Positions 3,839 through 43,156 of a DNA stretch of 64,000 nucleotides are shown here, piece by piece (the stretch's first letter is position 1; the number at the start of each line of letters is the position of its first letter). The notes beneath the pieces were generated by a model. The model was not told the origin of the DNA. It did no database searches and saw only the letters and a program-made list of their open reading frames with translations. This stretch comes from Macrostomum hystrix. Its lineage: Eukaryota; Animalia; Platyhelminthes. The DNA is taken from contig CATNEN010000039.1 of assembly GCA_950097015.1 (NCBI GenBank), forward strand, positions 5,394,001 through 5,458,000. The letters run 5' to 3'. A program made the position numbers and the translations under genes.

Positions 3839-3840
3839 CT

Positions 3841-4063: not shown

Positions 4064-4096
4064 AAAGGGCACAAATCACGAAGCAGAGAGCCTCAC

Positions 4097-9030: not shown

Positions 9031-11570
9031 CTATCCTAGATCAATCTCTAATATCCCAGATCAATCTCTAATATCCTAGATCAATCTCTAATATCCTAGA
9101 TCAATCTCTAATATCCCAGATCAATCTCTAATATCCCAGATCAATCTCTAATATCCCAGATCAATCTCTAATATCCTAAATTAATCTATAATATCCCAGA
9201 TCAATCTCTAATATCCTAGATCAATCTCTAATATCCTAGATCAATCTCTATTATCCTAGATCAATCTCTAATATCCCAGATCAATCTCTAATATTCCAGA
9301 TCAATCTCTAATATCCTAAATTAATCTATAATATCCCAGATCAATCTCTAATATCCTAGATCAATCTCTAATATCCTAGATCAATCTCTATTATCCTAGA
9401 TCAATCTCTAATATCCCAGATCAATCTCTAATATTCCAGATCAATCTCTAATATCCCAGATCAATCTCTAATATCCCAGATCAATCTCTAATATCCCAGA
9501 TCAATCTCTAATATCCCAGATCAATCTCTAATATCCCAGATCAATCTATAATATCCTAGATCAATCTCTAATATCCCAGATCAATCTCTAATATCCTAAA
9601 TTAATCTCTAATATCCCAGATCAATCTCTAATATCCCAGATCAATCTCTAATATCCTAAATTAATCTCTAATATCCCAGATCAATCTCTAATATCCTAGA
9701 TCAATCTCTAATATCCTAGATCAATCTCTAATATCCTAGATCAATCTCTAATATCCTAGATCAATCTCTAATATCCCAGATCAATCTCTAATATCCTAGA
9801 TCAATCTCTAATATCCCAGATCAATCTCAAATATCCCAGATCAATCTCTAATATCCTAGATCAATCTCTAATATCCCAGATCAATCTCTAATATCCTAGA
9901 TCAATCTCTAATATCCTAGATCAATCTCTAATATCCCAGATCAATCTCTAATATCCTAGATCAATCTCTAATATCCCAGATCAATCTCAAATATCCCAGA
10001 TCAATCTCTAATATCCTAGATCAATCTCTAATATCCCAGATCAATCTCTAATATCCCAGATCAATCTCTAATATCCCAGATCAATCTCTAATATCCCAGA
10101 TCAATCTCTAATATCCTAAATTAATCTATAATATCCCAGATCAATCTCTAATATCCTAGATCAATCTCTAATATCCTAGATCAATCTCTATTATCCTAGA
10201 TCAATCTCTAATATCCCAGATCAATCTCTAATATTCCAGATCAATCTCTAATATCCTAAATTAATCTATAATATCCCAGATCAATCTCTAATATCCTAGA
10301 TCAATCTCTAATATCCTAGATCAATCTCTATTATCCTAGATCAATCTCTAATATCCCAGATCAATCTCTAATATTCCAGATCAATCTCTAATATCCCAGA
10401 TCAATCTCTAATATCCCAGATCAATCTCTAATATCCCAGATCAATCTCTAATATCCCAGATCAATCTCTAATATCCCAGATCAATCTATAATATCCTAGA
10501 TCAATCTCTAATATCCCAGATCAATCTCTAATATCCTAAATTAATCTCTAATATCCCAGATCAATCTCTAATATCCCAGATCAATCTCTAATATCCTAAA
10601 TTAATCTCTAATATCCCAGATCAATCTCTAATATCCTAGATCAATCTCTAATATCCCAGATCAATCTCTAATATCCTAGATCAATCTCTAATATCCTAGA
10701 TCAATCTCTAATATCCCAGATCAATCTCTAATATCCTAGATCAATCTCTAATATCCCAGATCAATCTCAAATATCCCAGATCAATCTCTAATATCCTAGA
10801 TCAATCTCTAATATCCCAGATCAATCTCTAATATCCTAGATCAATCTCTAATATCCTAGATCAATCTCTAATATCCCAGATCAATCTCTAATATCCTAGA
10901 TCAATCTCTAATATCCCAGATCAATCTCAAATATCCCAGATCAATCTCTAATATCCTAGATCAATCTCTAATATCCCAGATCAATCTCTAATATCCCAGA
11001 TCAATCTCTAATATCCCAGATCAATCTCTAATATCCCAGATCAATCTATAATATCCTAGATCAATCTCTAATATCCTAGATCAATCTCTAATATCCTAGA
11101 TCAATCTCTAATATCCTAGATCAATCTCTAATATCCCAGATCAATCTCTAATATCCCAGATCAATTTCTAATATCCCAGATCAATCTCTAATATCCTAGA
11201 TCAATCTATAATATCCTAGATCAATCTCTAATATCCCAGATCAATCTCTAATATCCCAGATCAATCTCTAATATCCCAGATCAATCTCTAATATCCCAGA
11301 TCAATCTCTAATATCCCAGATCAATCTCTAATATCCCAGATCAATTTCTAATATCCCAGATCAATCTCTAATATCCCAGATCAATCTCTAATATCCCAGA
11401 TCAATCTCTAATATCCCAGATCAATCTCTAATATCCTAGATCAATCTATAATATCCTAGATCAATCTCTAATATCCCAGATCAATCTCTAATATCCCAGA
11501 TCAATCTCTAATATCCCAGATCAATCTCTAATATCCTAGATTAATCACTAATCTCATAGATCAGTATATA
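9031..11570. repeat. 20-bp minisatellite (TCAATCTCTAATATCCYAGA)n
   Basis: About 125 units in register. Confidence 0.98.
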
Positions 11571-12094
11571 ATCACCCCAGTTGACTCTAATGAATATTAA
11601 TCCCCAACAAGAAATGTTGATATATTTCAATCAATGTATCAAATCCAGCTTTGATAAGCATCAGAATCCACCCTCAGCATCAGGGAGTCATTCTGTCATT
11701 CTTTCTCATTGTTTTGCACTTTCTTGCTGCCGTGTCCATTTTCCAGTTTTCTACATGAAAATTCTGTCCCGGCTCTCCGCACTGGCCATGCCACAGAGAT
11801 TATTGCTTAACAATCTTCAGCCCAGTTGCTGGCCAACAACAGTCCGCCATTATTAATAATTCAGCTTGAGTGCGATGCAAGGCCGCAACAGGAAGCCGCG
11901 GGTTCCCCAGTTGCTGAGTGGCATGTTAGTGCCTGCTCTAACATGTGCCAATTCTCCGTAGATTAATTGTTTACCCAATTTTCCTATTTCTAGCTGGCAC
12001 AGAGAGCACTTTGCTTAGCTGCCTACTGTCAGTAGAACAGAAAGAATATTTATTCGGAAAATAAGTTTTTTAAATTGAAAAAAGTGGAATATGT

Positions 12095-12350
12095 TAAAGG
12101 AAAGGAAAGGGGAGAGTGGAACATGGATAGGGAAGGGGAAAGGTAATAATAGAATTGGGATAGGAGAGAGGAAGGGTGAGAGTTGAACGTAGAGAGAGGA
12201 TAAGAAAGGTGAGAGGATAAGGGAGAGGAAAGGGAAGAGAAAGGGGAGAGTGGAATGGGGATAGAGTAGAGGAAAGGGGAGAGAATGGGGAGAGGAAAGG
12301 GGAGAGAAAGGGGAGAGGAGAGGAACTGCGGGAAAGGAAAGGAGAGAAAA
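12095..12350. repeat. Purine-rich (GA) low-complexity tract
   Basis: GGGGAGAG/GGAAAG degenerate repeats. Confidence 0.8.
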
Positions 12351-12916
12351 AGCAATCCTAAAATGGGCTGTGGTAATTAACCGCAGTTCAATAACTTTTT
12401 CCCCAAAAAGCAGTTTCTCGCCCTGATTTCTACAGCGTGGATTGAAGGCACGAAGCGAACCCCGCCAGTTGGTTTTGCTGGACTGACTTGTAGCTATTTC
12501 GGGGAGTCGGCTATGTTGAGTCTGCCCCAAAGTGGGTGCTTTTTGGCCTCTTCTTGATCGGCGTGTTTGCTCAGACTGATGAGGCTGCTGAGCAAGATTT
12601 CTTCGAATTCGCCAAACAAGCAGAAATTATGCGTTTTTGTGCCGCTTGAGAAATTAACAGACTTTTTGAGCAGAGTTTGAGCAGAATTTGGTGGCTCGCC
12701 AGAGGGTGGGGCTCTAGGGGAACAGCAATTTGGCTCAGCATCTGCTTCTGCTGCAGGACCTCCTAATTATCGAAGAGGCTGTGTGCTCACTGTGTGCTCA
12801 CAGTGTGCTTAGGAGATGCACAAAATGGCTTATCCACTGTGAGGGGTGGAGTTGCGAGTAAATGCTGCGGAGAAGTAAAAGTTACTTAGAGATGAGATCT
12901 GAATTCTTCGACAATG

Positions 12917-13730
12917 CTGAAAGGTACCTGAAGGGATCTCATCGATGAGACTGAAGTACCTGAAGGGATATTCTAGGTGAAGCTGAAGTACCTGAAAGGA
13001 TATTATCGGTGAGACTGAAGGACCTGAATATGAAATCATCGGTGAGACTGAAGTACCTGAAGGGAAATCATCGGTGAGACTGAAGTACCTGAAGGGAAAC
13101 CATCGGTGAGACTGAAGTACCTGAAGTGAAATCATCGGTGAGACTGAAGTACCTGAAGTGAAATCATCGGTGAGAGTGAAGTACCTGAAGGGAAATCATC
13201 GGTGAGACCGAAGTACCTGAAGGGAAATCATCGGTGAGACTGAAGTACCTGAAGTGAAATCATCGGTGAGAGTGAAGTACCTGAAGGGAAATCATCGGTG
13301 AGACCGAAGTACCTGAAGGGAAATCATCGGTGAGACTGAAGTACCTGAAGTGAAATCATCGGTGAGACTGAAGTACCTGAAGTGAAATCATCGGTGAGAC
13401 TGAAGTACCTGAAGTGAAATCATCGGTGAGAGTGAAGTACCTGAAGGGAAATCATCGGTGAGACCGAAGTACCTGAAGGGAAATCATCGGTGAGACTGAA
13501 GTACCTGAAGTGAAATCATCGGTGAGAGTGAAGTACCTGAAGGGAAATCATCGGTGAGACCGAAGTACCTGAAGGGAAATCATCGGTGAGACTGAAGTAC
13601 CTGAAGGGAAATCATCGGTGAGAGTGAAGTACCTGAAGGGAAATCATCGGTGAGACCGAAGTACCTGAAGTGAAATCATCGGTGAGACTGAAGTTCCTGA
13701 CGGGAAGTCATTGTGACTCAAACGAAGTAC
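12917..13730. repeat. 32-bp minisatellite (GTACCTGAAGKGAAATCATCGGTGAGACTGAA)n
   Basis: Direct tandem repetition. Confidence 0.96.
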
Positions 13731-14364
13731 TTTGCCGGACAGCAGAAACGTAAAAGAAAGTTAATATTTGATGAAATCGATGAGCAGGCACCTGATTCTC
13801 TGATTCATGGAAATGCAAATAAGCCAGTCCTAAAATGCAAATACCAAAATACCTTGCCAATAAACGACTGAGATCATTCAATGCTACTGCTCACGATGAA
13901 GAATAAATGTGCTTTCAGGGGCCAAATGAATATGAAATTTTGTTGCCATCTTCAAGAACAGGAGCTGAGAAAAAATTCAAATCGATGGGTGAAAAATGTC
14001 TTCAGCTAAAGAATCACAACTGCTTTGGCTAGACATGATGAAGCTTTCGGGTTGCTTGCGGTCAAGTGTTTGCAGATCTGCTCCGGGCATAGAGATAGCT
14101 TTGCAATTCATGAAATTTATGAAACACTGCTGTAGGGGTGGCCTCAGAAACCCTTATCAGTGTACTTTTAGTTATTTTAATTATCAGGATTATTCAAAAC
14201 AGAATCTTTGAAATTATTATTCGATGTAAAAAAAACTATTGTCTTAGCTGTTCTCGATGAAAAAAGGTAGATTTGTCTATGGCACGAAAAAAACACTTCA
14301 AAATTCAAAAGCGGAGATTAGCAAAATAATAGGATATTAACAAATCCGTTTTCTAATCTATCCC

Positions 14365-14743
14365 CACGGATGAAGGATTAGAATGGATTGCTAATCTATC
14401 CTCACAGATGAAGTATTAGAGTAGAATGGATTGCTAATCTAATCTCACAGATGAAGGATAAGAATGGACTGCTAATCTACTCTCACGGATGAAGGATAAG
14501 AATGGACTGCTAATCTACTCTCACGGATGAAGGATAAGAATGGACTGCTAATCTACTCTCACGGATGAAGGATAAGAATGGACTGCTAATCTACTCTCAC
14601 GGATGAAGGATAAGAATGGACTGCTAATCTACTCTCACGGATGAAGGATAAGAATGGACTGCTAATCTACTCTCACGGATGAAGGATAAGAATGGACTGC
14701 TAATCTATCCTCACAGATGAAGGATTATAATGGATTGCTAATC
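14365..14743. repeat. 38-bp minisatellite (CACGGATGAAGGATAAGAATGGACTGCTAATCTACTCT)n
   Basis: About 10 units; matches the terminus of the MITE at 54329-54987. Confidence 0.95.
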
Positions 14744-15380
14744 CAGAGACAGTGAAGTGTCAGAGTACACCAGACGTAGCAGCAGAGCTGGTCGCAAAAT
14801 GTCATCTTCTCACCTGAGATGCCAATCACGTATTTCTGGCTGAGCAAAAGCAGCAGACAATGCACCGTTAGCTGGCTGCTTTGCAGCATGTCGGCAAGTC
14901 CGATGCTTTTCCGACTCAGACTTGGCGGTGTTTTCAATTGGCCTTACCTGCAGATTGGATTAACAAAATCGATTAGGATTAAGATCCCAGATCCCATCCA
15001 AGAGCTGGCGTGAGGTGTGAACTGAGGAGGGTGACCAGGCACACAGGTTGGATTTCACACTCGCGGCAACGGATTGTGATGTTTCAGAATGGACAAAAAG
15101 GATTCAGTAGAGCTGTGTTGACTGTGCCTTGCTTATTCTTGGCTTGTTCTTTGGGCTAGGAAGCGAAACGATATGGTTTTCAGTCTTTCACGATCCTGCA
15201 CTAGAAGACTTCAATTGATAGCGCTAATTCCGTGGCAATAGGCCAGCCAATCACAGACACTAGCGGTTTTGACACCCATTGGACGAAACTCAAACAGGAA
15301 AGTGTGAGAAGAGAAGGCCAATAGACTGGCTTCTTGACGAGAATCTGAGCACCCAACTATAACATTTCGTTTGGAAATTC

Positions 15381-16350
15381 GATGATTCAGTCACTCCCTC
15401 AGTCAATGATTCAGTCACTCCCTCAGTCAATGTTTCAGTCACTCCCTCAGTCAATGTTTCAGTCACCCCCTCAGCCAATGATTCAGTCACTCCCTCAGCC
15501 AATGATTCAGTCACTCCCTCAGTCAATGTTTCAGTCACTCCCTCAGCCAATGATTCAGTCACTCCCTCAGCCAATGATTCAGTCACTCCCTCAGCCAATG
15601 ATTCAGTCACTCCCTCAGCCAATGATTCAGTCACTCCCTCAGTCAATGATTCAGTCACTCCCTCAGTCAATGATTCAGTCACTCCCTCAGCCAATGATTC
15701 AGTCACTCCCTCAGCCAATGATTCAGTCACTCCCTCAGCCAATGATTCAGTCACTCCCTCAGCCAATGATTCAGTCACTCCCTCAGCCAATGATTCAGTC
15801 ACTCCCTCAGTCAATGATTCAGTCACTCCCTCAGTCAATGATTCAGTCACTCCCTCAGTCAATGTTTCAGTCACTCCCTCAGCCAATGATTCAGTCACTC
15901 CCTCAGCCAATGATTCAGTCACTCCCTCAGCCAATGATTCAGTCACTCCCTCAGCCAATGATTCAGTCACTCCCTCAGCCAATGATTCAGTCACTCCCTC
16001 AGTCAATGATTCAGTCACTCCCTCAGTCAATGTTTCAGTCACTACCACAGTAAGCCCCTCCTTCAGTCAATGATTCAGTCACTCCCCCAGTCAATTTTTC
16101 AGTCACTCCCTCAGTCAATGATTCAGTCACTCCCTCAGCCAATGATTCAGTCACTCCCTCAGCCAGTGATTCAGTCACTCCCTCAGCCAATGATTCAGTC
16201 ACTCCCTCAGCCAATGATTCAGTCACTCCCTCAGTCAATGATTCAGTCACTCCCTCAGCCAATGATTCAGTCACTCCCTCAGTCAATGATTCAGTCACTC
16301 CCTCAGCCAATGATTCAGTCACTCCCTCAGCCAATGATTCAGTCACTCCC
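15381..16350. repeat. 24-bp minisatellite (AATGATTCAGTCACTCCCTCAGYC)n
   Basis: Direct tandem repetition. Confidence 0.97.
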
Positions 16351-16892
16351 TATTTCTTTGTCAATGAAATGTATTTTATTATTTTATAATCTAATCCAAA
16401 AGCTTTACGTTTCGCAGCGCAGATTGCACTACCCGCAGAATAAAAGCGTCAGATTAAGGATGTCTGGAAAAACAGAAATTCCTATTAAAAGACATCATTT
16501 TGAACGCAAAAACAATACCAATATTCAAAATTTATTATCGATTTTGTCAAAAGCCAGAGAAACACAAACGGGCTCTCGTTAGTGCCAAATTCAAAATATT
16601 ATCAACTCGGGAATGATTGCGAAGTGGCACTCACGGAGCTTGACTTGGCAAAAGAAGAACAGAATTTCTGTGGCTTCAGCGAGACACAGAATCTAATCTG
16701 ATTCATTGAGTTCCAGCATATTTAGCCTCGCGTCAATATGAAGACAGCCAAACAGAAGGGCCCGGACTAGGGGGACGTCTAAAAGTGCGAGCGCAGACCG
16801 ATTGATGCTCCTGATTTGATGCTTGACTCGGCCGGCTAAATATGAATTTTATTACTAGAACTCAACAACTACTCATATTCTCACCGAATGTG

Positions 16893-17857
16893 CATAGATC
16901 CCATCCATCTGCGAGTAGACTCGATCCCATCTGTGAGTACACTAGATCCCATCTGTGAGTACACTAGATCCCATCTGTGAGTACACTAGATCCCATCTGT
17001 GAGTACACTAGATCCAATCTGTGAGTACACTAGATCCCATCTGTGAGTACACTAGATCCCATCTGTGAGTACACTAGATCCAATCTGTGAGTACACAAGA
17101 ACCCATCTGTGAGTACACTAGATCCCATCTGTGAGTACACTAGATCCCATCTGTGAGTACACTAGATCCCATCTGTGAGTACACTAGATCCCATCTGTGA
17201 GTACACTAGATCCAATCTGTGAGTACACTAGATCCCATCTGTGAGTACACTAGATCCCATCTGTGAGTACACTAGATCCAATCTGTGAGTACACAAGAAC
17301 CCATCTGTGAGTACACCATATCCCATCTGTGAGTACACTAGATCCCATCTGTGAGTACACTAAATCCAATCTGTGAGTACACTAGATCCCATCAGTGAGC
17401 AGACTAGATCACATCAGTGAGCAGACTAGATCCCATCAGTGAGCAGACTAGATCCCATCTGTGAGTACACTAGATCCCATCTGTGAGTACACTAGATCCC
17501 ATCTGTGAGTACACTAGATCCCATCTGTGAGTACACTAGATCCCATCCTTGAGTACACTGGATCCCATCTGTGAGTACACTAGATCCCATTTGTGAGCAG
17601 ACAAGATCCTATCTGTAAGTACACTTGATCCCATCTGTAAGTACACTAGATCCCATTTGTGAGCAGACAAGATCCCATCTGTAAGTACACTTGATCCTAT
17701 CTGTAAGTACACTTGATCCCATCTGTAAGTACACTAGATCCCATCTGTGAGTACACTAGATCCCATCTGTGAGCAGACTAGATCCGATCATCTGTGAGCA
17801 GACTAGATGCCATCTGTGAGCAGACTAGATGCCATCTGTGAGCAGACTAGATCCCAT
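16893..17857 (+). repeat. 22-bp minisatellite (CTAGATCCCATCTGTGAGTACA)n, left arm of an inverted pair
   Basis: Direct tandem repetition. Confidence 0.96.
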
Positions 17858-18470
17858 TAATAGCATTTGTGTCAAGATAAGTTGCAGTAATCTAACTGTG
17901 TTTACCGAGTACATCCATGAAATGCGCAGATCAGAGCCCAAATATTTTAGTCCTGATTTTTAAGCACCCTTCACTAACAGCCATAGTTTTCTGATCCCAT
18001 TCAAGGCATCTTCAGTGTTCTCCAAGATACAACACCGATGCCATACAACTCGCTGCCAGAGTGGGATCAGGTTGAGCAATGCTTGACTGTCAAAAACGAA
18101 GTCAGAAGCGAGGAGCCACACACACAGCCCACTTGACCAGCCTGTGCAGCATCCAAGGATTTGAGAGGCCAAACATCAACGAATGAAGAAGTGGGGAGAT
18201 GTTGTAGGATAAAAATCCCAATCCATTAGGGCATCAAGCATTAATCAGCTGTGACAGAAGCGAAGCGTCCTGTACCGAGCGCCACTTTTCTGGATCCTCT
18301 TTTAGATTTCTCTCACGGGGAAGGCGAAGGCGAAGGTGTTCCGACTGTCTGGAGCTGCCAGGTTTCTGTTCAAACACTGCTAATTTGCCTCTCCGCCTCC
18401 ATTTGACTGATTAACTTGCTCAACTGGCTCTGCCGCTTTGGATAAGCTGGTCTTACTTGAAGAACTGCTC

Positions 18471-19312
18471 ACTGATGGGATCTAGTCTACTCACAGATGG
18501 GATCTAGTCTACTCACAGATGGGATCTAGTCTGCTCACAGATGGGATCTGGTCTGCTCACAGATGGGATCTGGTCTGCTCACAGATGGGATCTAGTGTAC
18601 TCACAGATGGGATCTGGTCTACTCACAGATGGGATCTGGTCTACTCACAGATGGGATCTGGTCTACTCACAGATGGGATCTAGTCTGCTCACAGATGGGA
18701 TCTAGTCTACTCACAGATGGGATCTAGTGTACTCACAGATGGGATCTGGTCTGCTCACAGATGGGATCTAGTCTGCTCACAGATGGGATCTAGTCTGCTC
18801 ACAGATGGGATTTGGTCTGCTCACGGATGGGATTTAGTGTACTCACAGATGGGATCTAGTGTACTCACAGATGGGATCTAGTGTACTCACAGATGGGATC
18901 TAGTGTACTCACAGATGGGATCTAGTGTACTCACAGATGGGATCTAGTGTACTCACAGATGGGATCTAGTGTACTCACAGATGGGATCTAGTGTACTCAC
19001 AGATAGGATCTAGTGTACTCAGAGATGGGATCTGGTCTACTCACAGATGGGATCTAGTGTACTCACAGATGGGATCTGGTCTACTCACAGATGGGATCTA
19101 GTCTGCTCACAGATGGATGGGATCGAGTCTACTGACAGATGGGATCTAGTCTGCTCAAAGATGGGATCTAGTCTGCTCACAGATGGATGGGATCGAGTCT
19201 ACTGACAGATGGGATCTAGTCTGCTCACAGATGGATGGGATCGAGTCTACTGACAGATGGGATCTAGTCTGCTCAAAGATGGGATCTAGTCTGCTCACAA
19301 ATGGATTAAATC
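18471..19312 (-). repeat. Same 22-bp minisatellite in reverse orientation (TGTACTCACAGATGGGATCTAG)n, right arm
   Basis: Reverse complement of the 16893-17857 unit. Confidence 0.96.
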
Positions 19313-32439: not shown

Positions 32440-33540
32440 CCCCTATTCCTATTCCTATTCCCGTCCCTATTCCCGTCCCTATTCCCATTCCTATTCCCGT
32501 CCCTATTCCCATTCCTATTCCCATCCCTATTCTTACCCCTATTCCCATTCCTATTCCCATCCCTATTCTTACCCCTATTCCCATTTCTATTCCCGTCCCT
32601 ATTCCCATCCCTATTCCCATCCCTATTCTTATCCACATTTCCATTCTTATTCCCATCCCTATTCCCATCCCTATTCTTATCCATATTCCCATCTCTATTC
32701 CGATCCCCTATTCCCATCCCTATTTCCATTCCTATTCCCATCCCTATTCTTATCCATATTCCCATCCCTATTCCTATCCCTATTCCCATTCCTATTCCCA
32801 TTCCTATTCCCGTCCCTATTCCCATCCCTATTCCCATCCCTATTCTCATTCCTATTCCCATCCCTATTCTTATCCATATTTCCATTCCTATTCCCATCCC
32901 TATTCTTACCCCTATTCCCATTCCTATTCCCGTCCCTATTCCCATCCCTATTCCCATCCCTATTCTTATCCACATTTCCATTCTTATTCCCATCCCTATT
33001 CCCATCCCTATTCTTATCCATATTCCCATCTCTATTCCGATCCCCTATTCCCATCCCTATTTCCATTCCTATTCCCATCCCTATTCTTATCCATATTCCC
33101 ATCCCTATTCCTATCCCTATTCCCATTCCTATTCCCATTCCTATTCCCGTCCCTATTCCCATCCCTATTCCCATCCCTATTCTTACCCCTATTCCCATTC
33201 CTATTCCCGTCCCTATTCCCATCCCTATTCCCATCCCTATTCTTATCCACATTTCCATTCCTATTCGCATCCCTATTCCCATCCCTATTCCCATCCCTAT
33301 TCTTATCCATATTCCCATCTCTATTCCAATCCCCTATTCCCATCCCTACTCCCATCCCTATTCTTATCCCTATTCCCATCAATATTTCCATTCACATTCC
33401 GATCCATATTCCCATCCCAATTCCCATTCCTATTCCCATCCCAATTCCCATCCCAATTCCCATTCCTATTCCCATTCCTATTCCCATGCCAATACCAATA
33501 CCCCATGCCGTATCCCCATCTCTATTCCCTCCCTATTCCC
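32440..33540. repeat. 12-bp repeat (CCTATTCCCATY)n with higher-order duplication
   Basis: Direct reading; variant CTCTATTCCRATCCCC recurs at about 32692, 33030 and 33319. Confidence 0.95.
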
Positions 33541-34042: not shown

Positions 34043-34800
34043 ATGGGATTAGGATGGGATGGGATGGGATGGATTAGGATGGGATTAGGATGGGATGGGA
34101 TGGGATGGATTTGGATAGGATGGAATGGGATGGATAAGGGTGGGATGGGATGGATTTGGATAGGATGGAATGGGATGGATTAGGATGGGATGGGATGGAT
34201 TTGGATAGGATGGGATGGGATGGGATGGGATGGGATGGATTTGGATAGGATGGGATGGGATGGGATGGGATGGATTTGGATAGGATGGGATGGGATGGGA
34301 TGGACTAGGATGGGATGGGATGTGATGGGATGGGATGGATTTGGATAGGATGGGATGGGATGGATTTGGATGGGATGGATTTGGATGGGATGGATTTGGA
34401 TGGGATGGGATGGGATGGATTAGGATGGGATGGGATGGGATGGATTAGGATGGGATGGGATGAGATGGGATGGGATGGGATGGGATGGGATGGGATGGGA
34501 TGGGATGGGATGGGATGGGATGGATTTGGATAGGATGGGATGGGATGGGATGGATTTGGATAGGATGGGATGGGATGGATTAGGATGGGATGGGATGGGA
34601 TGGATTAGGATGGGATGGGATGGGATGGATTAGGATGGGATGGGATGAGATGGGATGGGATGGGATGGGATGGGATGGGATGGGATGGGATGGGATGGGA
34701 TGGGATGGATTTGGATAGGATGGGATGGGATGGGATGGATTTGGATAGGATGGGATGGGATGGATTAGGATGGGATGGGATGGGATGGGATGGGATGGGA
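34043..34800. repeat. (GGGAT)n microsatellite
   Basis: Direct reading. Confidence 0.97.
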
Positions 34801-35317
34801 ACTTTTTGGTTTAGTACAGTCGCCATTGAGGCCAACAATAAAGCATTTTCTGATTTGCTGATTCTGTCAAATTAACAAGTACCTGATCAAGGTAACTGAA
34901 TGCTGTGAGCTCAGGCCTTGTATATCAGCAATATGTACAAAACAATAGCTGTAACTGCGTTTGTGTCCAAACGAGATCGTGAGCAAGAGTTTCTTCCGCC
35001 AGCCATTTTGAGCATGGTCAACCGGAATGGTATATAAATATATACAAATCGTTTTTTGCTCGTTGCTTGACTACTACTATGACTGCGACAGAGTGAATGA
35101 ATCGCGGTGTTAAGGTATATTCTACTGCTACAAGCACTCAGCGATAATGTTGCTGTCTCATGTGTCCATTAATTAATGACAAATCATAAGGACTTCTGGA
35201 CAATTGATTACTGGATTGTACATGGTCCAACCGCGTTTAGTATTCTGTTACTGAAAATATCTATGTTAATATGGGCTGCGAATATGCACAGATTCTGTGT
35301 GGAAATGCAAAATGTCA

Positions 35318-36230
35318 GTGTGAAAATCTATAGATTCTGTGTGAAAATCTATAGATTCTGGGTGAAAATCTATAGATTCTGTGTGAAAATCTATAGATTC
35401 TGTGTGAAAATCTATAGATTCTGTGTGAAAATCTTTTGATTCTGTGTGAAAATCTTTTGATTCTGTGTGAAAATCTATAGATTCTGTGTGAAAATCTTTT
35501 GATTCTGTGTGAAAATCTATAGATTCTGTGTGAAAATCTTTTGATTCTGGGTGAAAATCTATAGATTCTGTGTGAAAATCTATAGATTCTGTGTGAAAAT
35601 CTATAGATTCTGTGTGAAAATCTTTTGATTCTGGGTGAAAATCTATATATTCTGTGTGAAAATCTATAGATTCTGTGTGAAAATCTATAGATTCTGTGTG
35701 AAAATCTTTTGATTCTGTGTGAAAATCTTTTGATTCTGGGTGAAAATCTATAGATTCTGTGTGAAAATCTATAGATTCTCTGTGAAAATCTATAGATTCT
35801 GTGTGAAAATCTATAGATTCTGTGTGAAAATCTATAGATTCTGTGTGAAAATCTTTTGATTCTGTGTGAAAATCTTTTGATTCTGGGTGAAAATCTATAG
35901 ATTCTGTGTGAAAATCTATAGATTCTCTGTGAAAATCTATAGATTCTGTGTGAAAATCTATAGATTCTGTGTGAAAGTCTATAGATTCTGTGGGAAAATC
36001 TTTTGATTCTGGGTGAAAATCTATATATTCTGTGTGAAAATCTATAGATTCTGTGTGAAAATCTATAGATTCTGTGTGAAAATCTATAGATTCTGTGTGA
36101 AAATCTTTTGATTCTGGGTGTAAATCTATAGATTCTGTGTGAAAATCTTTTGATTCTGGGTGAAAATCTATAGATTCTGTAAATCTGTAGATTCTGTAAA
36201 TCTGTAGATTCTGTAAATCTGTAAATTCTG
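35318..36230. repeat. 21-bp minisatellite (TGTGAAAATCTATAGATTCTG)n
   Basis: Direct tandem repetition; unit contains the palindrome AATCTATAGATT. Confidence 0.96.
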
Positions 36231-36682
36231 TTTTCTTGGTTGCACTGGATGTTTTTTCTTAGCCCTCTTATTCCAAGTTTGCTATCTCTCCCGTAGATCT
36301 CACAGTTCCCCTCTACTCAAACTGTCTACAACAGTCGAGTCTCCCGAAGAAAGTGTCCGTCACTGTCCGGCCAAAAGGATTAACGCTCTCGGAAATTGCT
36401 AGCTTAACTCGCTACGCCGAATATCCCACCCAGTGGGATGTCCGCATCACTGCAGTGGCTGCTCTACTTCCCAATAGCTAATTTGTTTGCATAGAAGGAG
36501 GAATGGGACAGGGTAAAATATTTCCCAAGCTCCTCCTGTTGATTGCGGGCAAACCCGAATGATCCCCAGACATTCTCAGGGGTCGAAGCGCCTTAGTACG
36601 ATGGGATAAATGAGGAATAAAAAAAACATTAGTCGACTCGCGGACAAGGAGATTTGGCCACAGAAAATTGAGAACTTTACTG

Positions 36683-38212
36683 ACTGACACTAGTACTGAC
36701 TGTTGTACGAGCTGACACTATACTGAATGTTTGACACAATCTGACACTAGTTCCACTGCTGTACGAGCTGACACTAGTACTGACTGCTGTACGAGCTGAC
36801 ACTATACTGACTGTTGTACGAGCTGACACTAGTACTGACTGTTGTACGAGCTGACACTAGTACTGACTTTTGTATGATCTGACAATAGTACTGACTGCTG
36901 TATTATCTGACACTATATTGAATGTTTGACACAATCTGACACTAGTTCCACTGTTGTACGAGCTGACACTAGTACTGACTGTTGTATGATCTGACACTAG
37001 TACTGACTGTTGTACGAGCTGACACTAGCACTGACTGTTGTATGATCTGACACTAGTACTGACTTTTGTATGATCTGACAATAGTACTGACTGCTGTATT
37101 ATCTGACACTATATTGAATGTTTAACATAATCTGACACTAGTTCCACTGTTGTACGAGCTGACACTAGTACTGACTGTTGTACGAGCTGACACTAGTACT
37201 GACTTTTGTATGAGCTGACACTAGTACTGACTGCTGTATTATCTGACACTATATTGAATGTTTGACACAATCTGACACTAGTTCCACTGTTGTACGAGCT
37301 GACACTAGTACTGACTGTTGTATGATCTGACACTAGTTCCACTGTTGTACGAGCTGACACTAGTACTGACTGTTGTACGAGCTGACACTAGTACTGACTG
37401 TTGTACGATCTGACAATAGTACTGACTGTTGTATGATCTGACACTAGTACTGACTGTTGTACGATCTGACACTAGTACTGACTTTTGTATGAGCTGACAC
37501 TAGTACTGACTGCTGTATTATCTGACACTATATTGAATGTTTGACACAATCTGACACTAGTTCCACTGTTGTACGAGCTGACACTAGTACTGACTTTTGT
37601 ATGAGCTGTCACTAGTACTGACTTTTGTATGATCTGACACTAGTACTGACTTTTGTATGATCTGACACTAGTACTGACTTTTGTATGATCTGACACTAGT
37701 ACTGACTTTTGTATGATCTGACACTAGTACTGACTTTTGTATGATCTGACACTAGTACTGACTGTTGTATGATCTCACACTAGTACTGACTTTTGTATGA
37801 TCTGACAATAGTACTGACTGCTGTATTATCTGACACTATACTGAATGTTTGACACAATCTGACACTAGTTCCACTGTTGTACGAGCTGACACTAGTACTG
37901 ACTTTTGTATGATCTGACACTAGCACTGACTGTTGTATGATCTCACACTAGTACTGACTTTTGTATGATCTGACAATAGTACTGACTGCTGTATTATCTG
38001 ACACTATACTGAATGTTTGACACAATCTGACACTAGTTCCACTGTTGTACGAGCTGACACTAGTACTGACTGTTGTATGATCTGACACTAGTACTGACTG
38101 TTGTACGAGCTGACACTAGCACTGACTGTTGTACGAGCTGACACTAGTACTGACTTTTTTATGATCACTGTACTAGTTGTACTGACTGTTTTACGAAATC
38201 TGACACTAGTGT
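36683..38212. repeat. 28-bp minisatellite (CTGACACTAGTACTGACTGTTGTACGAG)n
   Basis: Direct tandem repetition with recurring variants. Confidence 0.95.
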
Positions 38213-38761
38213 CAACAGCTATTCACAACCTAACACTGCTTATAACCTACCCAGCCCAGTCTATGAAACTCAAAAAACCTCGCTTGACAATAATCCAGAG
38301 TTGAAAATAAGAGACACAACAAAGAATGGCTTTCAAATCCGCGAAGCAATTAGCAGGAAACGTTGCCCAGACAGGTTATTTTCAAATAAGAAATTCAATG
38401 AGATTCAATATTTCGAAACACGTTTGGAACTTCCTGAGAGTGAGTGACTTCTTTTCAGACTCTAGAGTAAGTTTAGCACGCGATTTAGCTTGACGACAAG
38501 TTATTTTATATTGATCCATCACTTGAAGTTTCACATACTCCGAAAGGAAATCCCCTGACGTGATAATGGTAATGCTTTTTTTCCAAGTTATTTTTTTGCA
38601 CGAGTCTAGAATATAAGTAACGGATAACACCAATAATACTGCCAATGGTTTGTTGCTATGGGGTTGTGGCGAGGCTGCTTCAGCCGAAAAGGTAGGAGAA
38701 TGTTGGACGAGAGGGCGAGAGAGGGGATGAGAGTGGATGAGAAGATATGATATGGGTGCTA

Positions 38762-39890
38762 GGGGATCATAAGGATCAGAGGGGATCAGAGGGGATCAGA
38801 GCGATCAGAAGGGATAAAATGGGTTCAGAGGGCATCAGAGGGATCAGAGGGGATCAGAGGGAATCAGAGGGGATCAGAGGGAATCACAGGGGATCAGAGG
38901 GAATCACAGGGGATCAGAGGGGATCAGAGGGGATCAGAGGGGATCAGAGGGGATCAGAGGGGATCAGAGGGAATCACAGGGGATCAGAGGGAATCACAGG
39001 GGATCAGAGGGGATCAGAGGGAATCACAGGGGATCAGAGGGAATCACAGGGGATCAGAGGGGATCAGAGGGGATCAGAGGGGATCAGAGGGGATCAGAGG
39101 GGATCAGAGGGAATCACAGGGGATCAGAGGGAATCACAGGGGATCAGAGGGAATCACAGGGGATCAGAGGGGATCAGAGGGGATCAGAGGGGATCAGAGG
39201 GGATCAGAGGGGATCAGAAGGGATCAGTGGGTATCAGAGTGGATCAGAGGGATCAGAGGGGATCAGAGGGGATCAGAGGGGATCAGAGTGGATCAGAGGG
39301 GATCAGAGTGGATCAGAGGGATCAGAGGGGATCAGAAGGGATCAGAGCGGATCAGATTGGATCAGAGTGGATCAGATTGGATCAGAGGGGATCAGAGGGG
39401 ATCAGAGGGGATCAGAGGGGATCAGAGGGGATCAGAGGGGATCAGAGGGGATCAGAAGGGATCAGTGGGGATCAGAGTGGATCAGAGGGGATCAGAGGGA
39501 TCAGAGGGATCAGAGGGGATCAGAGTGGATCAGAGTGGATCAGAGTGGATCAGAGTGGATCAGAGGGATCAGAGGGGATCAGAGGGATCAGAGGGGATCA
39601 GAGGGGATCAGAGTGGATCAGAGTGGATCAGAGGGGATCAGAGTGGATCAGAGGGATCAGAGGGGATCAGAAGGGATCAGAGCGGATCAGATTGGATCAG
39701 AGGGGATCAGAGGGGATCAGAGGGGATCAGAGGGGATCAGAGGGGATCAGAGGGGATCAGAGGGGATCAGAAGGGATCAGTGGGGATCAGAGTGGATCAG
39801 AGGGGATCAGAAGGGATCAGTGGGGATCAGAGTGGATCAGAGGGGATCAAAGGGGATCAAAGGGGATCAGAGGGATCAGATGAGATCAGA
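38762..39890. repeat. 10-bp repeat (GGATCAGAGG)n
   Basis: Direct reading. Confidence 0.97.
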
Positions 39891-40564
39891 GAGAAATCGT
39901 AGCGAAGGTAAAGAATATTAATTAAATAAAAAATTTTCCTGCCAAAAATAATAAAATACTTTCTTGGAAACGGGCCTTCTGAGTCTGCACTTACCAGCAA
40001 ACGGCCGGTTGTGAGTGGAACGGACTGCAAACTCTCGCAGCCTCACACGTGATTTACAGGCGCCGTCGCAGTGAAGATAACTTTAATTTATTTGATATTT
40101 TGTGATATGACAAAAGGCCCGGCTAAGTTGAAATCCTCTTTTTTAAATGAACTTTCTTAATTATTGAAGGGACTAATGAACTGCCAAAATCAAAGAATAA
40201 CTTGACGAGAAGCCAATAATAGCTTGCGGTGTGAGTGCATAGAACGACCTGACAATGGGCCATTGCAGTTCAGACCCTTATATTCTTTGCAGCTTTCGGT
40301 TGCCCTATTGACTGGTTGAGGAGGGAGGAGGGGCGCACTAGCTCTGCCCTCATTGGCTGATTGGCTATGGGGCTGTTCTGGTTAGTGTCCACTGCCGCGT
40401 GCTGTTTGCAATAGTGAAGCACTGGTGGCAAAAAAGTCTAGAGGATAATGGGGAGTCAGAAAATATGAGGGAGGGGAGATCGGATGGGAAAATTTAGAAA
40501 GAAATGAAATATATAAAATTAGAGCGTAGAGGTTAGATAATAGAGTGACTCTGATTTAGCAGAA

Positions 40565-41482
40565 AGGGTAGAGCGGAGAGGGTAGAGCGGAGAGGGTAGA
40601 GCGGAGAGGGTAAAGCGGAGAGGGTAGAGCGGAGAGGGTAGAGCGGAGAGGGTAGAGCGGAGAGGGCAGAGCGGAGAGGGCAAAGCGGAGAGGTTAGAGG
40701 GTTGAGGGCAGAGCGGAGAGGGTAGAGCGGAGAGGGTAGAGGGTTGAGGGCAGAGCGGAGAGGGTAGAGCGGAGAGGGTAGAGGGTTGAGGGCAGAGCGG
40801 AGAGGGCAGAGCGGAGAGGGTAGAGCGGAGAGGGTAGAGCGGAGAGGGCAGAGCGGAGAGGGCAAAGCGGAGAGGTTAGAGGGTTGAGGGCAGAGCGGAG
40901 AGGGTAGAGCGGAGAGGGTAGAGGGTTGAGGGCAGAGCGGAGAGGGTAGAGCGGAGAGGGTAGAGGGTTGAGGGCAGAGCGGAGAGGGCAGAGCGGAGAG
41001 GGTAGAGCGGAGAGGGTAGAGGGTTGAGGGCAGAGCAGAGAGGGTAGAGCGGAGAGGGTAGAGGGTTGAGGGCAGAGCAGAGAGGGTAGAGCGGAGAGGG
41101 TAGAGCGGAGAGGGTAGAGGGTTGAGGGCAGAGCAGAGAGGGTAGAGCGGAGAGGGTAGAGCGGAGAGGGTAGAGTGGAGAGGGTAGAGTGGAGAGGGTA
41201 GAGCGGAGAGGGTTGAGCGGAGAGGCTAGAGCGGAGAGGGTAGAGCGGAGAGGGTAGAGCGGAGAGGCTAGAGCGGAGAGGGTAGAGCGGAGAGAGCAGA
41301 GCGGAGAGGCTAGAGCGGAGAGGCTAGAGCGGAGAGGGTAGAGCGGAGAGGGTAGAGCGGAGAGGGCAGAGCGGAGAGGGTAGAGCGGAGAGGGTAGAGC
41401 GGAGAGGCTAGAGCGGAGAGGGTAGAGCGGAGAGGGTAGAGCGGAGAGGCTAGAGCGGAGAGGGTAGAGCGGAGAGGGTAGA
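40565..41482. repeat. 14-bp repeat (GAGGGTAGAGCGGA)n
   Basis: Direct reading. Confidence 0.96.
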
Positions 41483-42001
41483 ACAGGTAGAGAGGAGAGC
41501 GAAGAGGGTGCGGGTAGAGGGGTGGAGCAAAGTGATATGGCGAGTGTTGAGTGGCTTTAGATAGACAGCCTAGTCATGCGGGTTAAGAGTCTGTTCAATT
41601 GTCAGAACGTCAACTCATTCATGCTTTACTCAATTGATAGAAGAAAAGAAAAAATTATCGTAAAAAATAATTGGTGAATTTCGTTTCATTTTATTTCGCT
41701 AGCCTGTTTTCCACATTGCAAACTTCATTCTTTAATGCGCCATTCATTCTCGCAATGCCCGTTATAAAAGCTTTCTTTCTTCGCATATTTAGGAAATTAG
41801 TTTCCTGGATTTCGCTTCGAAATACTACTGTCAGTAGTCAGGCTAAGTAGTTCTGTCAGTCTATTAAAATAAATCATGCCTGACGCAATAATGGAGCTTA
41901 GAAATAAAATTTGATTGACAACAAGTGGAGATGACTCGTTGAAATATGGACAGAAAGATAAAGTGCCCTACAGAAAGATGAAGGACACATTATTTTAATT
42001 A

Positions 42002-42048
42002 GGCTGAGAATCGAACTCACGACCTCTCGTTCTGAAGTCCGGTGCTCT
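42002..42048 (-). mobile_element. tRNA-derived SINE head fragment
   Basis: Minus strand GGACTTCAGAACGAGAGGTCGTGAGTTCGATTCTC with a B-box; resembles the head at 8140-8206. Confidence 0.45.
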
Positions 42049-42629
42049 TTCCTAACTTTCCTAAGTAAGGGGAGAGATGGAAAGATGCGATACGAACTAG
42101 TGACTCAGCTGGGGATAGGGAAAATGCCTGGGGATCCGTTTAGAGATCCCAAAAAATAGAACTGCATGGGATCTTTATCCCGCCGAAAAGTGGGAGGGCT
42201 TCGCTTTTTTCTAGCGAGTGCGGCGCGGGTATTTCTTATTATGAAGCCGGCTCTGGGGATTTCAACCATTGCTTTAGTGAGCATTAATTAGTGCATTGGT
42301 TCGAATATATCCCCTTTCTCATCTTCCCCCCTGCCCAAGTCTATCGACAAACGGCCGCGTTGGCAAAGTGGTTATTTGGAGGGGTGAGTATGGACTCATA
42401 ATTCTTAGAACTGGGTGGGGGAATCGGTTGCGGGATTAGCTATTTTGGAGGCGGGTGGGACAAATATTCCCCCGGAAATTCTGGGATGAAAAGCAGCCAG
42501 ATAGAGAGAGGGAGATGACACAGTGGATTAACAAATAATTTTATTTATGAAATATATATAACTCTGTGCAGCTTGCCATTTTCAAATAGTAAAGTTTCAA
42601 CTCGCAGCATGCCAATAGGCTCCTAGCTT

Positions 42630-43156
42630 AATCCCATGTCCTAATTATCCCAACATCATCATCCCATAGCCTCATTATCCCATAGCGTCATCATCCCATA
42701 GCCTCATTATCCCATAGCCTCATTATCCCATAGTCTCATCATCCCATAGCCTCATTGTCCCATAGCCTCATTATCCAATAGCCCCATTATCCCATAGCCC
42801 CAGCAATCCCATAGCCCCATTATCCCATAGCCCCACTATCCCATAGCCCCAACTATCCCATAGCCCCATTATCCCATTGCCTCACTATCCCATAGCCCTA
42901 ACTATTCCATAGCCTCACTATCCCATAGCCCCAACTATCCCATAGCCTCATTATCCCTTAGGCTTAGCCCAATTATCCCATTGCCTCACTATCCCATAGC
43001 CTCATTACCCCATTGCCTCATCATCCCATAGCGTAATCATCCCATAGCGTCATCATCCCATAGCCTCATTATCCCATAGTCTCACTATCCCATTGCACCA
43101 TTATCCCATAGCCCCACTATCCCATAGCCCTATTATCGCATAGCCTCATTATCCCA
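42630..43156. repeat. About 16-bp degenerate minisatellite (ATCCCATAGCCTCATT)n
   Basis: Direct reading. Confidence 0.92.

What the first reader, a model, noticed from the sequence alone, without database searches (positions are those of the whole stretch)
9031..43156. Quasi-periodic 'beads' architecture: about 23 different tandem arrays separated by unique spacers of similar length
Seen: arrays vary about 10-fold in length (0.2-2.5 kb) and nearly all have different units. The unique gaps between them are, in order, roughly 520, 570, 635, 640, 545, 615, 610, 590, 560, 375, 445, 380, 590, 670, 400, 210, 500, 520, 450, 550, 675 and 1150 bp (hand estimates). Random placement would give a broad exponential spread. 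Array edges fade into local sequence, consistent with in-situ expansion. Inference: something sets where arrays are born or tolerated about every 0.4-0.7 kb. Candidates are a chromatin ruler (gaps near 2-3 nucleosome repeats), constrained regulatory islands between two developmental genes, or germline-limited segments removed by programmed DNA elimination. This is the best candidate here for an undescribed system.
Basis: partly seen in the sequence, partly recalled or inferred. Interest (0 to 1): 0.85.

Follow-up and report, generated by a model that had tools for sequence, protein, structure and literature searches.

The report
Evenly spaced minisatellite arrays in flatworm DNA
In the flatworm Macrostomum hystrix, non-coding DNA is packed with hundreds of different short tandem-repeat arrays that keep a surprisingly even distance of about 0.55 kb of single-copy DNA from one another, which points to an unknown rule that stops arrays from settling close together.

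Summary
Their spread (CV 0.31) is far below random placement (CV 0.96, P<1e-5).

The genome is the published Macrostomum hystrix assembly. The stretch lies between a LAR-type phosphatase gene and a PTB-type gene. The pattern is not special to this interval. In 264 kb around it there are 111 arrays covering 34.6% of bases, no gap of 33-209 bp, and a mode at 500-700 bp.

- **Spacers:** single-copy, unrelated to each other, non-coding, not decayed arrays, and AT-richer at their edges.
- **Arrays:** sharp edges, no target-site duplication, and families that recur on many contigs without shared flanks.
- **Non-coding spacers:** mean 536 bp (SD 152), none at 824-1107 bp, five at about 1.15 kb.

Best reading: near-saturating colonisation of non-coding DNA by dispersed minisatellite families, with interference between neighbouring arrays whose cause is unknown. 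No nucleosome-size steps were detectable. DNA elimination was not testable.

Another first-stage note (s1-411611, unchecked) reports the same pattern on another contig. I found no published description of the spacing.

The parts
9031..43156 (.). Array-saturated intergenic stretch. It holds 23 minisatellite arrays (about 22 kb) alternating with 22 single-copy non-coding spacers (about 12 kb).
   Evidence: All 22 spacers lack coding 3-periodicity, and their longest open frames hit no Pfam domain.
11564..24080 (.). The most regular run: nine consecutive spacers of 539-641 bp (mean 595, SD 37).
   Evidence: The run length gives P=2e-4 by permutation among short gaps (band chosen after seeing the data). 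The nine spacers show no similarity to each other and no shared motif.
9032..11563 (.). Array, 20-bp unit x 127, 94% identity.
12103..12323 (.). Array, purine-rich 23/33/68-bp unit, degenerate (64-82% identity).
12924..13711 (.). Array, 32-bp unit x 25, 92% identity.
14353..14743 (.). Array, 38-bp unit x 10, 92% identity. Relatives at 84-86% identity on contigs C29 and C39. Its unit is partly homologous to the unit of array 27622-28800.
15382..16351 (.). Array, 24-bp unit x 40, 93-97% identity. The family is found at 40 or more other loci on many contigs (66-88% identity), and the matches stop at the array edges.
16905..17857 (.). Array, 22-bp unit x 43, 91% identity.
18468..19304 (.). Array, the same 22-bp family as 16905-17857 but inverted (91% identity between the two).
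19925..21190 (.). Array, 21-bp unit x 60, 95% identity. Weaker relatives (67-79%) on contigs C24, C3, C8, C39 and C5.
21781..23518 (.). Array, 27-bp unit x 64, 88% identity. Relatives on C32 (80%) and C38 (73%).
24081..25081 (.). Array, 22-bp unit x 47 (153-bp higher order), 82-85% identity.
25438..26098 (.). Array, 20-bp unit x 32, 86-89% identity.
26548..27244 (.). Array, 22/20-bp units, 89-95% identity. Relatives on C1, C37, C39, C38, C24 and C3.
27622..28800 (.). Array, 27-bp unit x 44, 98% identity (the most homogeneous here). Relatives on C5, C1 and C24.
29379..30475 (.). Array, TCTCC x 219, 95% identity.
31142..31592 (.). Two abutting related arrays, 21-bp and 19-bp units.
31994..32230 (.). 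Array, 8-bp unit x 30, 96% identity. It is followed by the one short gap of the stretch (210 bp).
32441..33487 (.). Array, 12-bp unit x 87, 80% identity.
34046..34800 (.). Array, GGGAT-type 5/25/30-bp unit, 78-83% identity.
35290..36231 (.). Array, 21-bp unit x 42, 91% identity.
36684..38210 (.). Array, 28-bp unit x 54, 82% identity. Only a few weak relatives elsewhere (65-76%).
38761..39891 (.). Array, 10-bp unit x 114, 88% identity.
40565..41509 (.). Array, 14-bp unit x 67, 86% identity. It is followed by the double-length gap of 1121 bp.
42631..43156 (.). Array, 16-bp unit x 32, 81% identity.
3594..4376 (-). Immunoglobulin-domain exon of the LAR-type receptor tyrosine phosphatase gene, the left neighbour. 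The matching phosphatase domain lies about 39 kb before the window start.
   Evidence: Pfam Ig_3 at 1.8e-13. Y_phosphatase at 2.1e-56 at L010:1033-1752:-.
44780..58486 (+). PTB-type RNA-binding protein gene, the right neighbour. Its introns also hold arrays (46178-48140, 50034-50527, 50742-51351, 52206-52755, 55145-55346).
   Evidence: RRM_5 at 2.1e-19. 92% identity to a Macrostomum lignano protein. TRF.

Best explanation
The stretch is the intergenic DNA between the 5' ends of a LAR-type receptor phosphatase gene (minus strand) and a PTB-type RNA-binding protein gene (plus strand) of the flatworm Macrostomum hystrix. The introns and intergenic DNA for at least 100 kb on either side look the same. 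All of it has been colonised almost to saturation by short minisatellite arrays. Units are mostly 10-40 bp (mode 20-24), and arrays are 0.2-2.5 kb long. They belong to many families that recur on other contigs.

The DNA between arrays is ordinary single-copy non-coding DNA.

Inferred mechanism:
- An array becomes established only in unique DNA, preferentially AT-rich. It starts either as an array fragment inserted at a DNA break (as proposed for circular-DNA-mediated spread of satellites) or as a local seed that expands quickly.
- It is then homogenised in place.
- Establishment is suppressed within a few hundred bp of an existing array (interference).

Once the permitted slots are used, the remaining unique pieces fall in a narrow range (mean 0.54 kb, SD 0.15 kb). 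An empty or lost slot leaves a piece of about twice that size (about 1.15 kb).

The physical cause of the interference is not known. Candidates are chromatin next to an array (about three nucleosomes fit one spacer) or the length of DNA processed when breaks next to an unstable array are repaired.

Shown here: non-random spacing, single-copy unrelated spacers, dispersed array families, sharp edges without target-site duplication, and AT-rich junctions. Inferred: the way arrays arrive and the interference itself.
For: **Spacing**
- In the finding region CV is 0.31 against 0.96 for random placement, P<1e-5.
- Over 264 kb, 5 of 110 gaps are under 300 bp against 25% expected (p=1e-8), and none is 33-209 bp.
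- There is a run of nine gaps of 539-641 bp, P=2e-4.
- Non-coding spacers form a main peak (n=48, mean 536, SD 152). None is 824-1107 bp and five are 1108-1228 bp.

**Spacers are ordinary unique DNA**
- Three of three tested are single-copy in the 220-Mb genome.
- They show no similarity to each other beyond shuffled controls.
- They have no more cryptic periodicity than other unique DNA, and no shared motif.
- In the finding region they lack coding periodicity and Pfam hits.

**Arrays are dispersed families**
- The 24-mer array matches 40 or more loci on many contigs at 66-88% identity.
- Every match ends at the array edge. Other arrays behave likewise.

**Junctions and sizes**
- No target-site duplication, and abrupt junctions.
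- Array lengths are bimodal, with a trough at 75-200 bp.
- GC falls to 0.40-0.41 within 50 bp of array edges, against 0.47-0.49 in spacer centres.

**Orientation and young DNA**
- Array orientation is random with respect to the host gene strand.
- A young LTR retrotransposon with an intact 1337-aa pol frame lies within a 10.5-kb array-free gap.
Against: - A hard exclusion distance at saturation predicts gaps within a factor of two and skewed to the short side. The observed main peak spans 210-823 bp and is bell-shaped, so simple 'parking' is not sufficient (my reasoning).
- Two arrays can lie 226 bp apart with an exon filling the gap (45952-46177). In about 10 of 28 exon-bearing spacers one open frame covers 80% or more of the spacer. 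Arrays can therefore abut functional DNA closely.
- Non-coding-looking stretches of 2-6 kb without arrays exist. Saturation is regional, which fits local stepwise spread or constraint as well as it fits interference.
- Only 264 kb of one contig, plus one 3-kb locus elsewhere, could be examined.
- No cross-species, chromatin or read data could be obtained.
Confidence: 0.5

Rival explanations
1. Nucleosome lattice. Arrays are placed, or survive, only at linker positions of a phased nucleosome array. Spacers would then hold whole numbers of nucleosomes, mostly three (about 3 x 190 bp), sometimes two, four or six.
For: The mode at 550-650 bp and the second cluster at about 1.15 kb fit 3 and 6 nucleosome repeats. 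Junctions are AT-rich and spacer centres are GC-richer, as expected for linkers and nucleosome-covered DNA. The run of nine gaps has a CV of only 0.06.
Against: The gap lengths show no significant periodicity. The best period is 192 bp with R=0.16 and P=0.85 on all short gaps, and 148 bp with P=0.30 on non-coding gaps. Long unique DNA shows no intrinsic GC periodicity. Unit lengths show no helical-phase preference. Why the third linker would be preferred over the first is unexplained.
Confidence: 0.15
2. Functional islands. Arrays fill all DNA that selection does not protect, so each unique spacer is a constrained element (regulatory module or non-coding exon). The spacing then reflects the size of those elements.
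For: Arrays come within tens of bp of exons. Some introns are little more than an array (first-stage note s1-851538). Spacers have GC-richer cores. The stretch lies between two divergently oriented genes with complex regulation.
Against: Nine consecutive elements of 539-641 bp and an overall CV of 0.28 are unusually uniform for regulatory modules. Spacers share no motifs. The same spacing is seen in introns and in other intergenic DNA. Array-free non-coding stretches of several kb also exist. Conservation was not testable.
Confidence: 0.15
3. Stepwise local spread. An existing unstable array induces a new array about 0.55-0.6 kb away, for example at the end of a repair-synthesis tract or by template switching. 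Beads would then be laid down one after another.
For: Array-dense runs alternate with array-free non-coding stretches. There is a run of nine near-equal steps. Related arrays are somewhat enriched among neighbours: adjacent pairs 4 against 1 expected, and within five positions 10 against 5. This includes three inverted pairs at about 90% identity.
Against: Most neighbouring arrays are unrelated (57 of 111 have no relative in the 264 kb). There is no gradient of array identity along the run. Array identity and adjacent gap length do not correlate, and neither do neighbouring gaps.
Confidence: 0.1
4. Relic of an old tandem duplication whose roughly 0.6-kb unit contained a hypervariable minisatellite.
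For: The spacer length in 11.5-24 kb is near-constant.
Against: Spacers show no similarity above shuffled controls in local or semi-global alignments. The arrays belong to unrelated, genome-wide families. The same spacing occurs across unrelated genes.
Confidence: 0.03
5. Germline-limited segments removed by programmed DNA elimination, or an assembly artefact.
For: None found.
Against: Arrays of 0.2-2.5 kb with unique flanks lie inside functioning genes (introns of the LAR-type and PTB-type genes). I know of no report of elimination in this genus (own knowledge, not searched). The published assembly is highly contiguous, with 42 contigs and a Merqury quality value of 42.8 (PMC10468722), and the arrays here are short.
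Confidence: 0.03

Closest known systems
Euchromatic satellite DNAs of Tribolium castaneum (Cast1-Cast9), spread in gene-rich regions by bursts, transposable elements and circular DNA (PMC11610590)
   Same: Short tandem arrays lie inside gene-rich DNA. The same family occurs on many chromosomes without shared flanks. Array ends show no regular pattern. The surroundings of insertion sites are A/T-rich.
   Different: Here there are hundreds of different families rather than nine. Units are 10-40 bp rather than about 170-340 bp. Arrays cover about a third of the DNA examined, and they keep an even distance from each other. No spacing rule is reported in that paper. Presence of these arrays in circular DNA was not tested.
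Classical short-period ('Xenopus-type') interspersion of repeats with single-copy DNA (Davidson and Britten, 1970s; from my own knowledge, not re-read here)
   Same: Short repetitive blocks alternate with single-copy DNA of sub-kilobase to kilobase length across much of an animal genome.
   Different: The classical repeats are dispersed elements of about 0.3 kb, and the single-copy lengths are broadly distributed. Here the repeats are tandem arrays of many families, and the single-copy pieces are under-dispersed (CV about 0.3).
High simple and tandem repeat content reported for Macrostomum lignano (PMC5730564)
   Same: Same genus. Simple and tandem repeats are given as 15% of the genome and blamed for assembly difficulty.
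   Different: Neither that paper nor the M. hystrix genome paper analyses array families, dispersal or spacing. The latter states that the nature of the repeats was outside its scope.
Repeat-based holocentromeres with regularly spaced satellite arrays (Rhynchospora Tyba arrays; from my own knowledge)
   Same: Tandem arrays are spread along chromosome arms at regular intervals.
   Different: There, one satellite family forms all arrays, and the spacing is hundreds of kb with centromere function. Here every array differs and the spacing is about 0.55 kb.
Transposable elements with internal tandem repeats (Helitron-, MITE- or foldback-type)
   Same: They give dispersed copies of the same tandem repeat.
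   Different: Those have conserved termini, and in most types target-site duplications or inverted terminal repeats. Here the homology ends at the array edge and there is no duplication.

Membership tests
Dispersed euchromatic satellite/minisatellite arrays (Tribolium Cast-type) | Short tandem arrays embedded in gene-rich, non-heterochromatic DNA | tested here: met
   111 arrays in 264 kb lie in the introns and between the genes for LAR-type phosphatase, kinesin, PTB-type, HECT/WWE and WD40 proteins.
Dispersed euchromatic satellite/minisatellite arrays (Tribolium Cast-type) | The same repeat family at many loci on different chromosomes, without shared flanking sequence | tested here: met
   The 24-mer family has 40 or more loci on many contigs, and the matches stop at the array edges. 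This holds for at least six of the arrays tested.
Dispersed euchromatic satellite/minisatellite arrays (Tribolium Cast-type) | A/T-rich or poly(A)/(T) junction regions with microhomology | tested here: inconclusive
   GC dips to 0.40-0.41 at junctions, but runs of five or more A or T are not enriched there. Microhomology cannot be judged without empty sites.
Dispersed euchromatic satellite/minisatellite arrays (Tribolium Cast-type) | Repeats present in extrachromosomal circular DNA | not testable with these tools
   Needs Circle-seq or 2D gels.
Transposable element carrying an internal tandem array | Conserved element termini flanking the array in different copies | tested here: not met
   Own-genome matches cover query positions 84-1052 of a query whose array is at 83-1052. 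No flank homology was seen.
Transposable element carrying an internal tandem array | Target-site duplication | tested here: not met
   The longest shared word between left and right flanks is 3.57 against 3.36 in unpaired controls with 15-bp flanks, and 4.51 against 4.17 with 25-bp flanks.
Higher-order tandem duplication (macrosatellite with variable core) | Sequence similarity between successive spacers | tested here: not met
   blastn found none. Local alignment scores equal the shuffled controls (12.5 against 12.1). The nine regular spacers score 14.4 against 11.7 with overlapping ranges.
Nucleosome-ruler placement | Gap lengths quantised in multiples of one nucleosome repeat | tested here: inconclusive
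   The Rayleigh scan is not significant (P=0.85 and 0.30), with only 53-82 gaps.
Nucleosome-ruler placement | Phased nucleosomes in spacers, shown by MNase or ATAC | not testable with these tools
   No chromatin data could be reached.
Programmed DNA elimination (germline-limited DNA) | Sequence present in germline reads and absent from somatic reads, with reproducible break or rejoin sites | not testable with these tools
Repeat-based holocentromere arrays | One satellite family forms all the regularly spaced arrays | tested here: not met
   57 of 111 arrays have no relative within the 264 kb, and units differ from array to array.

The most novel reading that the evidence does not exclude
Macrostomum genomes obey a genome-wide spacing rule for tandem arrays. 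A chromatin-based or repair-based ruler allows a new minisatellite array only about 0.55 kb (roughly three nucleosomes) of unique DNA away from the next one. Tens of thousands of unrelated arrays would then form a quasi-lattice in all non-coding DNA. Such interference between unrelated tandem arrays has not, to my knowledge, been described.
Probability: 0.3. Interest if true: 0.8.

Novelty: new variant of a known kind. Interest (0 to 1): 0.6.

Why it matters
How satellite and minisatellite DNA spreads through gene-rich DNA is still poorly understood.

This small, well-assembled animal genome appears to hold on the order of 1e5 short arrays from many families. My extrapolation is 35% of 220 Mb divided by about 0.8 kb per array. 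Their even spacing is a quantitative signature that any model of array birth, insertion and loss must reproduce.

If the spacing reflects chromatin or break-repair tract lengths, the genome becomes a natural read-out of that process. If it reflects constraint, the spacers are a ready-made map of functional non-coding DNA in a regeneration model genus.

There is also a practical point. TRF alone marks 34.6% of this region as arrays, while the published RepeatMasker total for the genome is 22.9%. The arrays fill many introns.

Tried and rejected
**Ideas tested and not supported**
- **Hidden common element in the spacers:** blastn, local and semi-global alignments against shuffles, 7-mer and 9-mer presence tests. 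Nothing was found.
- **Spacers as decayed arrays:** their cryptic periodicity equals that of other unique DNA.
- **Spacers as exons:** this holds for 28 of 82 short gaps, mostly inside genes. It holds for none of the 22 in the finding region, and there are no Pfam hits.
- **RNA genes:** no Rfam or tRNA hits in the window.
- **Target-site duplications:** none. My first version of that test was biased because it included array bases, so I discarded it.
- **Universal core motif in array units:** only words shared by subsets were found, for example TCAGTC and TGGGAT in 9-12 of 108 units.
- **Nucleosome-size steps in gap lengths and helical phase in unit lengths:** not significant.
- **Intrinsic GC periodicity of unique DNA, and an AT valley in the middle of double-length gaps:** not seen.
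- **Correlations:** none between neighbouring gaps. Array length against adjacent gap length is only a weak trend (rho -0.28, P=0.06), and array identity shows no relation to adjacent gaps.
- **Array orientation against gene strand:** random.
- **Small 2-4-copy repeats:** uniformly placed, so they are chance events rather than proto-arrays avoiding big arrays.

- The Wasik et al. 2015 genome paper is not held.

Full report
**Observation**

Tandem Repeats Finder on the window finds 23 separate arrays between 9032 and 43156. The 22 gaps between them are 539, 600, 641, 638, 553, 610, 620, 590, 562, 356, 449, 377, 578, 666, 401, 210, 558, 489, 452, 550, 673 and 1121 bp.

Their coefficient of variation is 0.31. 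In 100,000 random placements of the same number of arrays in the same amount of unique DNA, the mean CV was 0.96 and the minimum was 0.41. The regularity is real and not a chance effect.

**Where this is**

The window is C39:5394001-5458000 of a genome of 220,453,370 bp in 42 contigs. Those are exactly the figures of the published Macrostomum hystrix assembly (PMC10468722, Table 1). An RRM exon in the window is 92% identical to a Macrostomum lignano protein.

- On the left, on the minus strand, lies a LAR-type receptor tyrosine phosphatase gene. Its Ig exon is at 3594-4376. Its phosphatase domain lies about 39 kb before the window.
- On the right, on the plus strand, lies a PTB-type gene from about 44.8 kb to beyond 58.5 kb.

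The 'beads' stretch is therefore the DNA between two divergently oriented genes.

**The pattern is not local**

I fetched 100 kb on each side and ran TRF on the 264 kb.
- There are 111 arrays of at least 150 bp, covering 34.6% of the bases. Nearly all have different units, most commonly 20-24 bp.
- They sit in the introns of the LAR-type and PTB-type genes and between other genes (kinesin, HECT/WWE ligase, WD40).
- Of 110 gaps, one is 32 bp, none is 33-209 bp, and five are below 300 bp. An exponential with the same median predicts 25% below 300 bp (p=1e-8).
- The mode is 500-700 bp.
- The result does not depend on the TRF score or on the minimum array length.
- One 3-kb locus on contig C33 shows the same look, with two arrays 627 bp apart.
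- A first-stage note on another contig (s1-411611, unchecked) describes the same alternation.

**The spacers**

- Three spacers searched against the whole genome are single-copy.
- Spacers do not resemble each other in blastn, in local alignments against shuffled controls, or among the nine most regular ones.
- They share no motif.
- They carry no more hidden periodicity than other unique DNA of the region, so they are not dead arrays.
- GC content is 0.40-0.41 within 50 bp of an array edge and 0.47-0.49 in spacer centres.

**Coding and non-coding spacers**

A three-base periodicity scan, calibrated on known exons of the window, separates two classes of short gaps.
- **Coding-like (28 of 82):** mostly inside the LAR-type gene. 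They are longer and more variable (median 818 bp). In about ten of them a single open frame fills 80% or more of the gap, so some introns are little more than an array next to the splice sites.
- **Non-coding-like (53):** a bell-shaped main peak (n=48, mean 536, SD 152, range 210-823). None is between 824 and 1107 bp, and five are at 1108-1228 bp, about twice the main mode.

All 22 spacers of the finding region are non-coding-like. Their longest open frames hit no Pfam family. No Rfam family or tRNA is present in the window.

**The arrays**

- Junctions are abrupt, and there is no target-site duplication.
- Array lengths are bimodal: 168 chance-level micro-duplications under 50 bp, 104 arrays of 200 bp or more, and only 17 in between at 75-200 bp.
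- Arrays are strongly strand-asymmetric, with a mean absolute GC skew of 0.5 against 0.08 in spacers. Their orientation is random with respect to the host gene.
- Arrays are not locus-specific inventions.
  - The 24-mer array at 15382-16351 matches 40 or more loci on many contigs at 66-88% identity.
  - Every match stops at the array edge.
  - The arrays at 14353, 19925, 21781, 26548, 27622 and 36684 also have relatives elsewhere.
- Within the 264 kb, related arrays are only mildly enriched among neighbours: 4 adjacent pairs against 1 expected. Three of the closest pairs are inverted, including 16905-17857 and 18468-19304.
- Units of different families share some words, such as TCAGTC and TGGGAT, in 9-12 of 108 arrays. 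There is no universal core.

**What sets the spacing**

Random insertion gives exponential gaps, so some interference between arrays is required.
- A hard exclusion distance at saturation (the 'parking' problem) predicts gaps within a twofold range, skewed to the short side. The observed peak is bell-shaped and spans a fourfold range, so that simple model does not fit (my reasoning).
- Gap lengths show no significant steps of nucleosome size. Power is low with 53-82 gaps.
- Unit lengths show no helical phase.
- Long unique DNA shows no intrinsic GC periodicity.
- Double-length gaps have no consistent central AT valley.
- Neighbouring gaps do not correlate. Array length shows only a weak negative trend with adjacent gap length (rho -0.28, P=0.06), and array identity shows no relation to it.
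- Nine consecutive gaps of 539-641 bp (mean 595, SD 37) are more regular than the general distribution allows (P=2e-4, band chosen after seeing the data).
- Saturation is regional. Non-coding-looking stretches of 2-6 kb without arrays exist. A 10.5-kb array-free gap contains a Ty3/gypsy-type retrotransposon with an intact 1337-residue pol frame, which fits young DNA not yet colonised.

**Best explanation and rivals**

The best explanation (confidence 0.5) is near-saturating colonisation of non-coding DNA by dispersed minisatellite families.
- Arrays establish only in unique, AT-rich DNA and not close to another array.
- The double-length gaps are empty or lost slots.
- How arrays arrive is inferred from the dispersed families, the sharp edges, the lack of duplications and the size trough. 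They may arrive as fragments inserted at breaks, as proposed for circular-DNA-mediated spread in Tribolium (PMC11610590), or as local seeds that expand fast.
- An earlier follow-up in this genome (s1-344290) reports in-situ expansion in duplicated tRNA spacers. Both routes may operate.

The cause of the interference is unknown. The rivals are:
- a nucleosome lattice (0.15);
- functional islands left between arrays (0.15);
- stepwise local spread from existing arrays (0.1);
- an old tandem duplication (0.03, tested and not supported);
- programmed elimination or an assembly artefact (0.03).

**Comparison with what is known**

- High simple and tandem repeat content is known for M. lignano (15%; PMC5730564).
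- The M. hystrix paper left the nature of the repeats open.
- Dispersed euchromatic satellites are well described in Tribolium and, from my own knowledge, in Drosophila.
- Short-period interspersion is a classical concept (my own knowledge).

What I did not find in the searchable literature is the combination seen here. Hundreds of unrelated array families fill a third of gene-rich DNA, and the unique pieces between them are under-dispersed at about 0.55 kb. A blank in that library is not proof of novelty.

**Limits**

Expression, polymorphism, and germline against soma could not be examined.

Noticed in passing
window 16905-17857 and 18468-19304; L007 around 7516-8086 and 8882-9223; L014:6575-6774 and L015:4530-5777: Three pairs of same-family arrays lie in inverted orientation at about 90% identity. 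They flank a 610-bp non-coding spacer, a 795-bp exon-like spacer inside the LAR-type gene, and a 7.7-kb stretch that includes HECT/WWE-coding frames. Inverted arrays in the two introns around an exon could promote back-splicing or exon skipping.
   Followed up: partly
L022:1586-5596 (minus strand), 81.6-85.6 kb beyond the window end: An intact 1337-residue pol open frame of a Ty3/gypsy-type LTR retrotransposon (protease, RT, RNase H, integrase) sits within a 10.5-kb gap that holds no arrays.
   Followed up: partly
window 2565-2811, 7785-7884, 54125-54328, 54988-55091, 61159-61371: A short dispersed element (about 100-250 bp, 73-91% identity between copies, both orientations) recurs in the array-free parts of the window. 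It is probably a small transposable element.
   Followed up: no
whole 264 kb (window plus L004-L023): TRF alone marks 34.6% of the bases as arrays. The published RepeatMasker total for this genome is 22.9%. Either this region is array-rich or the published figure undercounts minisatellites.
   Followed up: no
whole 264 kb: Array unit lengths peak at 20-24 bp (36 of 107 units). Arrays are strongly strand-asymmetric, with a mean absolute GC skew of 0.5. Array lengths have a trough at 75-200 bp. None of these is explained.
   Followed up: partly
window 45716-46177: An RRM exon of the PTB-type gene almost fills the 226-bp gap between a C-rich array (45716-45951) and a 2-kb array (46178-48140). Arrays therefore reach to within tens of bp of the splice sites.
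   Followed up: partly
window 44780-45163: The first coding exon of the PTB-type gene encodes long alanine and glutamine runs (GCN and CAG repeats). Similar CAG-rich coding repeats occur at 55486-55574 and 59523-59561.
   Followed up: no
L009:3569-4321 (minus), L014:6775-7740 and L015:263-1318 (plus), L020:7629-8480 (minus): The neighbouring genes, identified by Pfam, are a kinesin motor, a WWE plus HECT ubiquitin ligase, and a WD40 protein. The region is gene-dense despite its array load.
   Followed up: no
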